A stretch of 63,344 nucleotides of DNA, filler included, from Octopus bimaculoides (taxonomy: Eukaryota), in assembly GCF_001194135.2 (NCBI RefSeq). It is 8 parts of 7 records of this genome, joined end to end, with 100 filler letters (N's around TTAATTAATTAA, not from the genome) between each part and the next. Parts side by side here need not be neighbours in the genome. Positions count along the whole stretch, not along the records: positions 1 to 17,411 come from NC_068983.1; 7 more parts are not named here. One strand, 5' to 3'. The notes beneath the pieces were generated by a model that was not told the origin of the DNA, ran no database searches, and worked only from the letters and a program-made list of their open reading frames with translations. This document shows, one piece after another, positions 14,871-16,700 of the stretch. Each line of letters starts with the position of its first letter. Position 1 is the stretch's first letter. A program made the position numbers and the translations under genes.

Positions 14871-15197
14871 TATGATTTATATTTTGTTAATGACGCCATA
14901 ATGTTTTTCCTTAACATTCAGGATTTCACTACTTCCCCCCACTCACCCCCAAATGTCCTAGAATAAAATATGAGGTTTATGAAAAAAAAAAAAAATTTTA
15001 CGAATTGTTTCCTGAAGCCACAATGTTTCGTTATCAAACGAATTCGTTTGCGTCGTAAAGTTGTTAATTTATTTGTTTGTTTTTGCTGTAAGTTAAAAAA
15101 AGAACTGAGGAAATATTCTCCAAGTGTAGCGTCTTAACAGAGATGGAATATGCATGTATGTATGTATATGTATGTATGTATGTATATGTATGTATGT

Positions 15198-15312
15198 CAT
15201 TATTCAGTGTATTTCAAGATTTCTTGCCAAAAGAGAAAGAGCTGGTTTCTAACCTAGATCCAAGGCTCCTTCATTGGAATTTCAACATCAACAACAGGGT
15301 ATATTTGTTTGA
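15198..15312 (-). mobile_element. 3' UTR-like remnant of an R4/Dong-like RLE non-LTR retrotransposon
   Basis: Shares the gagc(t/c)ggttt-c(t/c)aac...caaggct motif with the 3' UTR at 16488-16600. (TGTA)n on both sides. Confidence 0.45.
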
Positions 15313-15462
15313 ATGTATGTATGTATTATGTATGTATATATGTATGTATGTATAAAGTATGTATATATGTATGTATGTATATATGTATATATGTATGTAT
15401 GTATGTATATATGTATGTATGTTTGTATGTATGTATATTTGTATGTTTTGTTTTATGTATGT

Positions 15463-15739
15463 CTTCTCATGCATTTAGTTGCATATCTAGACTTGCTCAT
15501 ATATATTTAAATGATAAACTTCTGGACAGTTTTACAGATCTTTACAATTCCAGTGATGGACTGCTTTCTTCGAATTAGTTTTCTCCTTTTTGATTTTGAG
15601 AAGCCTAATTTCTCAAGATTGGTATTTATGCAGTGTGTTACATATCCCAGGGCCCCAATAATTACAGTTATAAACCTGAACTTGTAATCTGGATAGAATA
15701 ACTTCAAATTTCTCTATAGTTTAGCATAGGTATTCTCTT
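15463..15739 (-). mobile_element. 5'-truncated R4/Dong-like RLE retrotransposon (C terminus of the ORF)
   Basis: Minus strand reads KENTYAKL*RNLKLFYPDYKFRFITVIIGALGYVTHCINTNLEKLGFS...KICKTVQKF*, the typical end of a restriction-like endonuclease domain (IIIGALG motif). (TGTA)n on both sides. Confidence 0.75.
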
Positions 15740-16051
15740 TGTATGTACGTACGTACGTACATACGTATGTATGTATGTATGTATGTATGTATGTATGTAT
15801 GTATATGTATGGATGTATGCATGTATATATATAAATGTATGTATATATGTATGCATATGTATGAATGTATGTATATGTATAAATGTATGCATGTATGTAT
15901 GTATGCATGTGCATGTATGTATATGTATAAATGTATGTATGTATATGTATGCATGCATGTATAGATGTATGTATGTACGTATGTATGTATGTATGTATAT
16001 GAATGTATGTATGTATATGAATGTATGTATATATATATGAATGTATGTATG
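15740..16051. repeat. Degenerate (TGTA)n array between RLE element copies
   Basis: Seen directly; similar arrays lie at 15147-15197 and 15313-15462. Confidence 0.95.
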
Positions 16052-16475
16052 TTGTTTTGTTTCATCTCTCTAATTTCGAATAAATCTTTTCCGGCCACCT
16101 CCTTGGTAGCAAGGTTGCAATGGAAAGTATCTTGCTTTAACCGTCTTTTTTGAAATCTGAAGAAGGTCTGGTTGACTTTATACTTCTAGATATCGCGATC
16201 GTTTGAAGCGCATGAAATAAGGATTTGCCTCTGCCCAATATTTCCCGTATGCCCCAGACATGTCGGTATGTGTCCTGTGACTCCAATAGTAATAACTATG
16301 AAACCGAAAGTATATCTTGGATACTGGGTTTTCAAACTGCTTACTAAAGATCCAGAGATGTCCTCTTTCTTTTGTATTTTTCTAACCACATTCTCATTCA
16401 GAGGGCAGCTGATTTCCACGACATAACACACCTTTTCTGTGTGGTTCCACACAACAAAATCTGTCCGCTTGTGTT
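16052..16475 (-). mobile_element. 5'-truncated R4/Dong-like RLE retrotransposon (endonuclease domain)
   Basis: KHKRTDFVVWNHTEKVCYVVEISCPLNENVVRKIQKKEDISGSL...YPRYTFGFIVITIGVTG fits a PD-(D/E)xK-type RLE domain. TGTA repeats at both junctions. Confidence 0.75.
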
Positions 16476-16487
16476 TTTGTATGTATG

Positions 16488-16700
16488 TCTCTTCTATTTT
16501 TTAATCATCATAAATCTTCCACTGAGGAGGGAGCCGGTTTCCAACAAATATACAAGGCTGTAATTGGGATGTAATTAACAGAGACAAATTCACAGTTGGA
16601 ACTTGAGAAAAGTCTTGCATATTTTTACTGTTCCACTCACATTTATACATGTGAACCTCTTTTTGTACAAGTAAAAGTCCAAGCAGGCTTGAGAAGACTA
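16488..16700 (-). mobile_element. 3' end of the same RLE retrotransposon family
   Basis: Aligns by eye with 46377-46530 (tgtatgtctcttctatttt...actgaggagggagcc...ggaacttgagaaaagtcttgcatat). The 3' end abuts TGTATGTATG. Confidence 0.7.

What the first reader, a model, noticed from the sequence alone, without database searches (positions are those of the whole stretch)
15147..16700. Head-to-tail pile of R4/Dong-like retrotransposon ends that appear to target (TACA)n microsatellites
Seen: four 5'-truncated fragments of an RLE-type non-LTR element (15198-15312, 15463-15739, 16052-16475, 16488-16700) all lie on the minus strand, each separated from the next by (TGTA)n. An independent copy at 46377-46616 also has (TGTA)n at both junctions. 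Repeat at the 5'-truncation junction cannot be explained by a 3' tail alone. Known: RLE elements are often sequence-specific (Dong inserts in TAA repeats), while ACAY targeting is known from APE-type Waldo elements. Inference: this is a (TACA)n-specific RLE family, with at least two subfamilies judged by their different 3' ends. If its 3' end regenerates the target, insertion hotspots would renew themselves and feed microsatellite growth. I cannot tell whether this family has been described.
Basis: partly seen in the sequence, partly recalled or inferred. Interest (0 to 1): 0.78.

Follow-up and report, generated by a model that had tools for sequence, protein, structure and literature searches.

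The report
Retrotransposon pile inside an (ACAT)n microsatellite
Three dead, front-truncated copies of a jumping gene with a restriction-enzyme-like nuclease sit head to tail inside one (ACAT)n simple repeat, and longer relatives elsewhere have that repeat on both sides, so this is a Dong-like element that targets a four-letter microsatellite: a known kind of element with a target I did not find described.

Summary
The fragments lie on the minus strand and are separated by (TGTA)n, which reads (ACAT)n on the element strand. Fragments 16052-16475 and 15463-15739 encode the C-terminal restriction-like endonuclease (RLE) region of RT-CCHC-RLE proteins: 384 profile hits, and the long ones have RVT_1 upstream. 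Fragment 16488-16700 holds the last ~23 codons plus a 3'UTR.

Fragment 15198-15312 is not a separate insertion. It is the distal 3'UTR of the 15463-15739 copy. An unlinked Octopus vulgaris paralogue and a divergent third copy show the same order: ORF end, internal (ACAT)n, then this segment. The pile is therefore three insertions from three divergent lineages, not a tandem duplication.

Outside loci support targeting. A long 5'-truncated copy has about 270 bp of (ACAT)n upstream and 256 bp downstream. A 15-kb long-read contig holds four independent same-strand copies separated by (ACAT)n. A sister lineage is flanked on both sides by (ACTT)n.

R4/Dong membership is likely but not shown by phylogeny. 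This is a new member of a known kind, of modest interest. Reads could not be checked, so misassembly through the repeats is not excluded.

The parts
16488..16700 (-). E1: 5'-truncated copy holding the last ~23-30 codons of the RT-CCHC-RLE ORF (stop codon 16590-16592) and a ~100-nt 3'UTR. Its 5' junction is with unique DNA and has no repeat.
   Evidence: tblastn with P0005 aa 627-649 matches 16661-16593. blastp of the peptide hits the C-terminal ends of many family members. Its 3'UTR is collinear with 15198-15312: only 1 of 2000 shuffles reached the observed score (alignment).
16476..16487 (-). ACATACATACAA. This is the short tail of E1 and also the 5' junction of E2.
   Evidence: Read directly from the sequence.
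16052..16475 (-). E2: 5'-truncated copy with the whole RLE region (about 111 codons after reading through one frameshift near 16255; stop codon 16137-16139) and an ~85-nt 3'UTR. It is decayed: PD has become TD and the D.N motif has become NEN.
   Evidence: tblastn with P0005 aa 535-622 matches 16476-16222 (E 5e-19). It is 54% identical to P0001. A same-family copy, L017, is 79% identical in DNA over 160 bp. Frames are shown.
15740..16051 (-). Degenerate (ACAT)n of about 313 bp. It is the tail or target remnant 3' of E2 and the 5' flank of E3.
   Evidence: TRF array 15740-16052, period 4, 79.8 copies, 76% matches.
15463..15739 (-). E3, proximal part: the last ~76 codons of the RLE region with one in-frame stop (ORF stop codon 15507-15509), plus 44 nt of 3'UTR.
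   Evidence: tblastn with P0005 aa 571-647. The peptide is 84% identical to P0021 from O. vulgaris. The DNA is 87% identical to L004:10160-10434.
15313..15462 (-). A microsatellite inside E3's 3'UTR, (ACAT)n of about 150 bp, expanded in this copy.
   Evidence: TRF. The same position holds about 50 bp in the unlinked O. vulgaris paralogue L004 (10425-10475) and (ACAT)3 in the divergent copy L005.
15198..15312 (-). E3, distal 3'UTR and the true 3' end of the element.
   Evidence: 88% identical to L004:10466-10577 and 76% identical to L005:655-729, in the same order after the ORF end and the internal repeat. Its divergence from L004 matches that of the proximal part (88% against 87%). The L004 flanks are not collinear with the window.
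15148..15197 (-). (ACAT)n of 50 bp. It is the tail of E3, or what remains of the target array, and is followed by unique DNA.
   Evidence: TRF array 15148-15197; junction shown.

Best explanation
The stretch holds the remains of three insertions of single-ORF non-LTR retrotransposons. Their protein ends in a CCHC motif and a PD-(D/E)XK restriction-like endonuclease, which places them in the R2 group and most likely in the R4/Dong clade. All three insertions went into one (ACAT)n array in the same orientation.

Shown:
- The protein homology of the fragments.
- The three divergent lineages.
- The composite E3, with a microsatellite inside its 3'UTR.
- The same repeat, on the element's sense strand, at both ends of unrelated copies elsewhere, including copies truncated at different codons.

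Inferred from how R2/R4/Dong elements work:
1. The protein recognises (ACAT)n duplex DNA and nicks the (ATGT)n strand.
2. The RNA, which ends in (ACAU)n, is copied from that nick by target-primed reverse transcription.
3. Pairing between the RNA tail and the nicked strand fixes the orientation.
4. Early termination of copying gives the 5' truncations.
5. Each insertion leaves array on both sides and adds a new tail, so the site stays a target and later copies stack head to tail.

The sister lineage flanked by (ACTT)n shows that the preferred repeat is a heritable property of a lineage. All three window copies are dead: they carry a stop, a frameshift and mutated catalytic motifs.
For: Family identity:
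- Profile search gave 384 hits; the long hits are RVT_1 + CCHC + RPD..E.S.P.D.N..K.
- The best solved relatives are R2 proteins (E 2e-20 over the RT).
- No APE domain and no N-terminal C2H2 were found in the 1149-aa ORF.

Not a duplication:
-.

E3 is one element:
-.

Targeting:
- L006 has (ACAT)n at 7559-7832 | copy | (TACA)n at 10760-11015. Its 5' end is a truncation when compared with L013.
- L018 copy A is truncated at about aa 469 and copy C at about aa 965. Each has (ACAT)n abutting the break. Four independent copies lie on one strand.
- L004 has (CCAT)n(ACAT)3 at its 5' junction, next to an antisense tRNA-like head rather than another copy's tail.
- All arrays of 12 bp or more in these loci are on the element-sense strand, except one 13-bp run.
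- 13 of 18 element ends (11 of 18 scored strictly) lie within 30 bp of such an array, against a 2.7% background: P about 1e-17 (1e-13 strict).

Lineage-specific repeat:
- L007 and L008-L012 are flanked on both sides by (ACTT)n.
- Three more proteins start with translated (TTAC)n.

Context from papers:
- Dong-R4 is the abundant RLE class in octopus (PMC13282606; PMC8967140; PMC10294476).
Against: - Only about a dozen independent copies were examined. No genome-wide census was possible, and the ends that share an array are not independent, so the P value is rough.
- Three copies show little or no repeat: L017 has degenerate AT/ACA-rich flanks, L019 (Argonauta) has none visible at its 3' end, and L004 has a tail of only about 12 nt. 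E1 has no 5' repeat.
- Target and tail have the same sequence, so endonuclease specificity cannot be told apart from homing by tail-to-target pairing.
- No empty orthologous site was seen.
- Clade membership is untested by phylogeny. No HDV-like ribozyme was found at the 5' ends, and HMMER did not detect the N-terminal Myb-like domain.
Confidence: 0.78

Rival explanations
1. A single integration event produced the pile. The reverse transcriptase jumped from one RNA template to the (ACAU)n 3' end of another, as R2 RT does in vitro. That would yield a head-to-tail concatemer of truncated cDNAs from different families in one step, rather than three successive insertions.
For: - All copies are 5'-truncated, lie on the same strand and are joined only by tail-type repeat.
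- E3's own 3'UTR looks like an older tail-in-tail composite.
- Serial template jumping is documented for R2-type RTs (PMC8594491, listed).
Against: - The 313-bp degenerate array between E2 and E3 is long for an RNA tail.
- L018 mixes near-full-length and short copies, separated by arrays of 16-140 bp.
- This rival still needs the first event to be in or beside (ACAT)n, so it changes how the pile was built, not the targeting.
- The relative ages of the three copies could not be measured.
Confidence: 0.09
2. Assembly artefact. Three separate element-plus-microsatellite loci were joined through their shared (TGTA)n arrays by a short-read assembler, so the pile does not exist as one stretch of DNA.
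For: - The piece is a gapped draft with five N runs, each next to simple repeats.
- The arrays of 150 and 313 bp exceed typical short-read length.
Against: - The E3 arrangement (ORF end, internal repeat, distal UTR) is reproduced in a chromosome-level O. vulgaris assembly.
- A comparable pile exists on a long-read-style contig (L018).
- The E1/E2 joint is only 12 nt of repeat, which any read would span.
Confidence: 0.07
3. The element is a non-specific LINE that merely ends in an (ACAT)n tail. The repeats at 5' junctions are incidental in a genome rich in simple repeats, or they are only the tails of neighbouring copies.
For: - Within the window, each 5' repeat is also the upstream copy's tail.
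- The genome is very rich in simple repeats.
- Some copies lack clear flanking repeats.
Against: - L006 and L018 copies A and C have long sense-strand (ACAT)n abutting different truncation points.
- L007 and L008 have 60-370 bp of their own cognate repeat upstream of intact 5' ends.
- Background occupancy is 2.7%.
- The arrays are strand-consistent in every locus.
Confidence: 0.04
4. A local tandem duplication of one element-plus-repeat unit.
For: Such duplication does occur in this family. In L018, 12464-13733 and 13745-15014 are 99.7% identical.
Against: The window fragments share no significant DNA similarity with each other beyond one 29-bp 3'UTR match, and they cover different parts of the element.
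Confidence: 0.01

Closest known systems
Dong (R4 clade; Bombyx mori, Anopheles gambiae, Biomphalaria glabrata, Darwinula stevensoni)
   Same: - A single ORF with RT followed by CCHC and an RLE.
- No N-terminal zinc fingers.
- Inserts in a microsatellite, so the same repeat lies on both sides.
- 5'-truncated copies are common.
(PMC3812793; PMC7998251.)
   Different: [quoted passage not shown] Here the flanking repeat is the tetranucleotide (ACAT)n, or (ACTT)n in a sister lineage.
- One lineage here carries a microsatellite inside its 3'UTR.
- Dong's 5' HDV-like ribozyme (PMC3774820) was not detected here.
- RT phylogeny was not done.
R4 (Ascaris and other nematodes)
   Same: The same RT-CCHC-RLE architecture and strict choice of a repeated target.
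   Different: R4 inserts at one site in the 28S rRNA gene, not in a simple repeat.
Waldo (R1 clade; WaldoAg1/2, WaldoFs1)
   Same: It targets (ACAY)n, a motif that includes ACAT, and it forms oriented insertions inside the array (PMC3812793).
   Different: Waldo has an N-terminal APE endonuclease and belongs to a different LINE group. The elements here have a C-terminal RLE and no APE. The shared target would be convergence.
Togen (NeSL-related, fish) and microsatellite-specific HERO families
   Same: They are RLE-type LINEs aimed at simple repeats: Togen at (TG)n, and some HERO families at microsatellites (PMC4640811).
   Different: The target repeats differ. I could not test whether the present elements fall in HERO or NeSL rather than R4/Dong. 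Published octopus annotation lists HERO as rare and Dong-R4 as abundant.
R2 (solved structures 9nl3, 9dou, 8gh6)
   Same: It is the best solved relative over the RT (E 2e-20). It has the same CCHC and RLE placement, and TPRT from a nick in a specific target.
   Different: R2 has N-terminal zinc-finger and Myb domains and inserts in 28S rDNA.

Membership tests
RLE-type (R2-group) non-LTR retrotransposon | RT domain followed by a CCHC motif and a PD-(D/E)XK restriction-like endonuclease at the C-terminus of a single ORF | tested here: met
   The window peptides match the C-terminal ~110 residues of proteins with RVT_1, CxxC..H...C and (R/K)PD...E(V/I)S.P.D.N...K.EK. The window itself holds only the RLE part and the 3'UTRs.
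RLE-type (R2-group) non-LTR retrotransposon | No apurinic/apyrimidinic (APE) endonuclease | tested here: met
   Pfam scans of the 1149-aa (L008), 868-aa (L007) and 1085-aa (P0036) ORFs show RVT_1 and zf-RVT only.
R4/Dong clade | RT phylogeny groups with R4, Dong and Rex6 rather than with HERO, NeSL, R2 or CRE | not testable with these tools
   No reference sequences were available. The supplements of three papers were checked and held none. Indirect support only: Dong-R4 is the abundant RLE class in octopus annotations.
R4/Dong clade | No N-terminal zinc fingers | tested here: met
   No C2H2 pattern in the first ~330 residues of six long ORFs, and no zinc-finger Pfam hit there.
R4/Dong clade | Divergent N-terminal Myb/SANT-like domain (PMC7998251) | tested here: inconclusive
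   A shared N-terminal motif, W..EL...L..CY....GYM.R(L/M)K..W...HPE......LRDQ, is visible in L007, L008, P0131 and P0268. HMMER against Pfam gives no Myb or SANT hit. The paper needed a profile-profile search.
R4/Dong clade | Insertion into a repeated target (rDNA or a microsatellite), with the target on both sides | tested here: met
   L006, L007, L008-L012, L018 and the window itself.
R4/Dong clade | HDV-like self-cleaving ribozyme at the 5' end (PMC3774820) | tested here: inconclusive
   An Rfam scan at E <= 1 of L006, L007 and L008 found only microsatellite-driven miRNA-model hits. Sequence models often miss these ribozymes, and the 5' ends are AT-rich.
Dong in the strict sense | Target is (TAA)n | tested here: not met
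   The flanking repeats are (ACAT)n or (ACTT)n. No (TAA)n lies at any junction.
Waldo (R1 clade) | N-terminal APE endonuclease, with (ACAY)n as target | tested here: not met
   The target motif overlaps, but the nuclease is a C-terminal RLE and no APE domain is present.
HERO / NeSL (Togen) microsatellite-specific families | RT phylogeny within HERO or NeSL | not testable with these tools
   No reference sequences. These families cannot be excluded on architecture alone.

The most novel reading that the evidence does not exclude
A widespread clade of RLE LINEs in cephalopods and other marine animals has switched from the classic Dong target (TAA)n to tetranucleotide repeats. Sister lineages read (ACAT)n or (ACTT)n. 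Each insertion regenerates its own target. These elements would then seed and lengthen tetranucleotide microsatellites, build head-to-tail LINE arrays, and capture a microsatellite inside their own 3'UTR. If the specificity lies in the small N-terminal Myb-like domain, two natural specificities differing by a 4-nt repeat would be available for domain-swap tests of how RLE LINEs read their target.
Probability: 0.45. Interest if true: 0.5.

Novelty: new member of a known kind. Interest (0 to 1): 0.35.

Why it matters
Microsatellite-specific RLE LINEs are an established kind of element, so the pile itself is not a surprise. What is new is modest.

- **Target.** The target is a tetranucleotide, not described for this clade in the papers I could search. 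The closest statement is that Dong uses (TAA)n in most insects, molluscs and cnidarians.
- **Paired lineages.** Sister lineages with (ACAT)n and (ACTT)n give a natural pair for asking which protein part reads the target.
- **Microsatellite growth.** The piles in the window and in L018 are direct examples of a self-renewing insertion hotspot. This bears on why cephalopod genomes are so rich in simple repeats and Dong-R4 copies.

Tried and rejected
No reads could be laid on the window, so neither assembly validation nor expression could be checked.
- Pfam on the window peptides gave nothing.
- The word-indexed homologue search with the 95-aa peptide found nothing. Only the exhaustive profile search worked.
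- A first four-row alignment misplaced the frameshifted piece and was dropped.
- Tandem duplication was rejected by self-BLAST.
- Orthology between the window and the O. vulgaris locus L004 was rejected. Only dispersed SINE-like repeats match outside the element.
- An Rfam search for a 5' HDV-like ribozyme found nothing.
- Pfam on the N-terminal segments, looking for Myb/SANT, found nothing.
- The consensus fold of the shared 3'UTR segment gave -2.2 kcal/mol with no covariation worth reporting. The 3'UTR of 16052-16139 is not significantly similar to the other two.
- Reading junction repeats from the N-termini of predicted proteins gave few cases: one ACAT and three TTAC among 349 proteins. 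ORF calling rarely runs through a repeat.
- An NJ tree of the ~110-aa RLE region groups five of the six (ACTT)n copies together (the sixth, P0233, falls beside the ACAT copies L006/L013), with (ACAT)n copies in several clades. The region is short and there is no support measure, so I use it only as a hint.
- Cluster look-up gave no useful names.
- Paper supplements held no reference R4/Dong/HERO sequences, so there is no RT phylogeny.
- The third homologue search was meant to sample the 15463-15739 family. It returned mainly full-coverage relatives and did not settle why that copy and L004 are truncated within about 10 nt of each other.
- The Argonauta locus L019 was too decayed to be informative.
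Full report
**1. What is in the window**

On the + strand, TRF reports (TGTA)n/(ATGT)n arrays at 15148-15197, 15313-15462 and 15740-16052. A 12-nt run lies at 16476-16487. Apart from these, TRF reports only one 19-bp ATGT run elsewhere in the 17.4-kb piece. 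An exact-repeat scan adds four sense-strand (ACAT)n runs of 12-16 bp, all embedded in other simple repeats.

Read on the minus strand, the layout is:

| Segment | Coordinates (5'->3' on the minus strand) |
|---|---|
| unique DNA | above 16700 |
| fragment | 16700-16488 |
| ACATACATACAA | 16487-16476 |
| fragment | 16475-16052 |
| (ACAT)n, ~313 bp | 16051-15740 |
| fragment | 15739-15463 |
| (ACAT)n, ~150 bp | 15462-15313 |
| fragment | 15312-15198 |
| (ACAT)n, 50 bp | 15197-15148 |
| unique DNA | below 15148 |

Every fragment's 3' end is followed by repeat that reads ACAT ACAT. The fragments are not copies of one another. Self-BLAST finds only one 29-bp, 79% match between 15198-15312 and 16488-16700.

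**2. Are they RLE-type retrotransposon ends?**

Pfam sees nothing in the short peptides, and a word-indexed search found nothing. I then built a profile from two peptides: the 16052-16475 peptide, read through one frameshift, and the 15463-15739 peptide (alignment A3). This profile found 384 proteins with E <= 0.001, and 87 with E <= 1e-10, among 1.84 billion representatives. The match is always at the extreme C-terminus.

The long hits (P0036, 1085 aa; P0131, 1139 aa; P0005; P0046) have RVT_1, then CxxC..H...C, then (R/K)PD[ILMV] ... E(V/I)S.P.D.N...K.EK...Y..L ... IGA(L/T)G ... GTVKI.KTFLKF-stop. That is the RT-CCHC-RLE layout of the R2 group. The best solved relatives of a full ORF are R2 proteins, with E 2e-20 over the RT. 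No APE domain and no N-terminal C2H2 finger are present.

What each window fragment holds:

- **16052-16475** covers the whole RLE region, but PD is mutated to TD and D.N to NEN, and there is one frameshift.
- **15463-15739** covers the last ~76 codons, with one in-frame stop.
- **16488-16700** keeps only ...GTVKICKTFLKFQL-stop plus about 100 nt of 3'UTR.

The two RLE peptides are 32% identical, so these are different families, not subfamilies.

**3. The fourth fragment is part of the third**

The closest relative of the 15463-15739 peptide is P0021, at 84% identity. It maps to Octopus vulgaris chromosome OX597824.1 (locus L004). That locus reads, in order:

1. (CCAT)n(ACAT)3
2. a homologue of 15739-15463
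3. about 50 bp of (ACAT)n
4. a homologue of 15312-15198
5. ACTGACATATAT
6. unrelated DNA

The two parts are 87% and 88% identical to the window parts. Outside the element, L004 and the window share only dispersed SINE-like repeats in no collinear order, so the loci are paralogous, not orthologous.

A third, more divergent copy (L005, 72% DNA identity) again has the ORF end, an ACAT-rich stretch with (ACAT)3, and then the homologue of 15312-15198. In the 16488-16700 copy, the same 3'UTR segment follows the stop codon directly, without a repeat. Its similarity to 15198-15312 is matched by only 1 of 2000 shuffles.

So 15198-15312 is the true 3' end of the element that begins at 15739, and 15313-15462 is a microsatellite inside its 3'UTR that has expanded in this copy. 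The pile holds three insertions.

**4. Is (ACAT)n a target or only a tail?**

Within the window, each 5'-junction repeat is also the tail of the copy upstream. I therefore looked elsewhere.

- **L006** (an ENA long contig) carries a ~3.2-kb copy with ORFs at 7981-10531. It is flanked by (ACAT)n at 7559-7832 and (TACA)n at 10760-11015, and these are the only such arrays in 20.5 kb. Comparison with a longer copy of the same family (L013) shows that the L006 5' end is a truncation that abuts the repeat directly.
- **L018** (another long contig) has, on one strand: (ACAT)n 307-434 | copy A from about aa 469 | (CATA)n 2443-2582 | copy B, near full length | ... | (CATA)n 8079-8106 | copy C from about aa 965 | (ACAT)n 8911-8946 | copy D, near full length | (ACAT)4. 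A fifth apparent copy is a 99.7% identical 1.27-kb tandem duplicate of D's end. This shows that local duplication also contributes to such piles.
- **Across seven loci** (109 kb), 2.7% of positions lie within 30 bp of a sense-strand (ACAT)n of 12 bp or more. Among scored element ends, 13 of 18 do (11 of 18 if the two 11-nt junctions are scored negative). The binomial P is about 1e-17 to 1e-13. This is rough, because neighbouring ends share arrays.
- **Strand.** All arrays but one 13-bp run are on the element-sense strand.

Counter-examples exist. L017, a relative of 16052-16475, has only degenerate AT/ACA-rich flanks. The Argonauta hians copy L019 shows no 3' repeat. The uppermost window copy has no 5' repeat.

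**5. A sister lineage with a different repeat**

- L007 is a ~4.4-kb element with an intact 5'UTR and start codon. It lies between 370 bp of (TACT)n and 158 bp of (CTTA)n, which are the same repeat on the same strand.
- L008-L012 have (CTTA)n, then a full-length element with an 1149-aa ORF, then (CTTA)5, then an internally deleted copy, then (CTTA)~10.
- Three further proteins begin with translated (TTAC)n just before the RLE homology.
- A crude NJ tree of the RLE region groups five of the six (ACTT)n copies together; the sixth (P0233) falls beside the (ACAT)n copies L006/L013. (ACAT)n copies are placed in several clades. This is a hint only.

The preferred repeat therefore looks like a heritable lineage trait.

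**6. Mechanism**

The shown parts are the anatomy above. The rest is inferred from R2/R4/Dong biology:

1. The protein binds the repeat duplex and nicks the (ATGT)n strand.
2. The (ACAU)n-ended RNA is reverse-transcribed from that nick.
3. Pairing of the tail with the nicked strand would explain the fixed orientation and the recurrent ACAT phase at 3' junctions.
4. Premature termination gives the 5' truncations.
5. The array survives on both sides and gains a new tail, so the site remains a target.

I cannot separate endonuclease specificity from tail-target pairing. I also cannot tell whether the first window copy landed at the edge of an existing array or created the array.

**7. Rivals**

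- One-event concatenation by template jumping is possible and would change only how the pile was built.
- A chimeric assembly through the repeats cannot be excluded. However, the E3 arrangement recurs in a chromosome-level assembly, and a comparable pile sits on a long-read-style contig.
- A non-specific LINE with an (ACAT)n tail is contradicted by L006, L007, L008 and L018.

**8. Comparison with what is known**

[quoted passage not shown] - (ACAY)n is the target of the APE-type Waldo elements.
- (TG)n-specific Togen families and some microsatellite-specific HERO families are further RLE examples (PMC4640811).
- Dong-R4 is abundant and apparently active in O. vulgaris: 5 families and 1129 recent insertions, against 13 insertions for HERO and 1 for R2 (PMC13282606). 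It is called nearly cephalopod-restricted among molluscs (PMC10294476).

None of the papers I could search mentions an (ACAT)n- or (ACTT)n-specific RLE element. Repbase and Dfam could not be consulted.

Membership in R4/Dong is likely on three grounds: the architecture, the absence of zinc fingers, and the target habit, together with the host's published annotation. It is unproven. No RT phylogeny was possible, no ribozyme was found, and HMMER did not detect a Myb-like domain.

**9. Verdict**

This is an ordinary kind of element with a target repeat not found described in the searchable literature, so it is a new member of a known kind and of modest interest.

Noticed in passing
window 17104-17411 (+), preceded by (TA)n at 16964-17102: A reverse-transcriptase fragment of a different LINE (RVT_1, E 1.4e-7; ...LASYADDTKV...) starts right after a 139-bp (TA)n array and runs off the end of the piece. 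It may be another 5'-truncated LINE next to a simple repeat.
   Followed up: partly
window 15739 and L004:10150: The window copy and its unlinked O. vulgaris paralogue are 5'-truncated within about 10 nt of each other (...K|ENTYAKL against ...SENENTYAEL). This could be a truncation hotspot, possibly from microhomology with the repeat, or a short non-autonomous derivative that spreads as a unit. It is unresolved.
   Followed up: partly
L005:228-262: In a longer copy of the same lineage, an (ATGT)n run interrupts the RLE reading frame at ...EKENI|(ATGT)n|YAEL. That is the opposite-strand motif, and it sits about 10-20 nt from the point where the two copies above are truncated.
   Followed up: no
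window 16735-16749: A CCTAACCCTAACCCT run, i.e. 2.5 units of the (TTAGGG)n-type telomere hexamer, lies about 35 bp beyond the 5' end of the uppermost copy.
   Followed up: no
window 4782-5149; also 3928-4085 and 12627-13047: A 184-bp SINE-like unit is present as a tandem pair and as dispersed copies. It is 75-88% identical to several places in the O. vulgaris locus L004. This suggests the source is an octopod.
   Followed up: partly
window 747-983, 6198-6629, 9662-9990, 10963-11123, 13389-14304: Five runs of N, each bordered by simple repeats. The piece comes from a gapped draft assembly in which repeats broke the contigs.
   Followed up: yes
L008-L012 (e.g. L008:2270-7600): Five near-identical composite loci occur in three assemblies. 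Each has (TTCC)n(CTTA)n, a full-length element, (CTTA)5, a 45-bp flank copy, an internally deleted element that keeps the 5' end, (CTTA)~10, the same ~30-bp flank again, and then Helitron-like ORFs. Either the second copy made a long target duplication, or the whole unit has been amplified with the neighbouring element.
   Followed up: partly
L018:12464-15014; L018:6750-7394 and 14951-15581; L004:10000-10067: L018 has a 1.27-kb tandem duplication (99.7% identical) of an element end plus flank. Separately, antisense tRNA-like SINE heads abut tetranucleotide arrays in L018 and L004, so other repeats also sit at these microsatellites.
   Followed up: partly
L001:67-558 (protein P0001): The closest intact relative of the 16052-16475 peptide reads through from the RLE end into a Pif1_2B-like (Helitron-type) segment on a 734-bp metagenome contig. 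This looks like a junction of two mobile elements called as one ORF.
   Followed up: no
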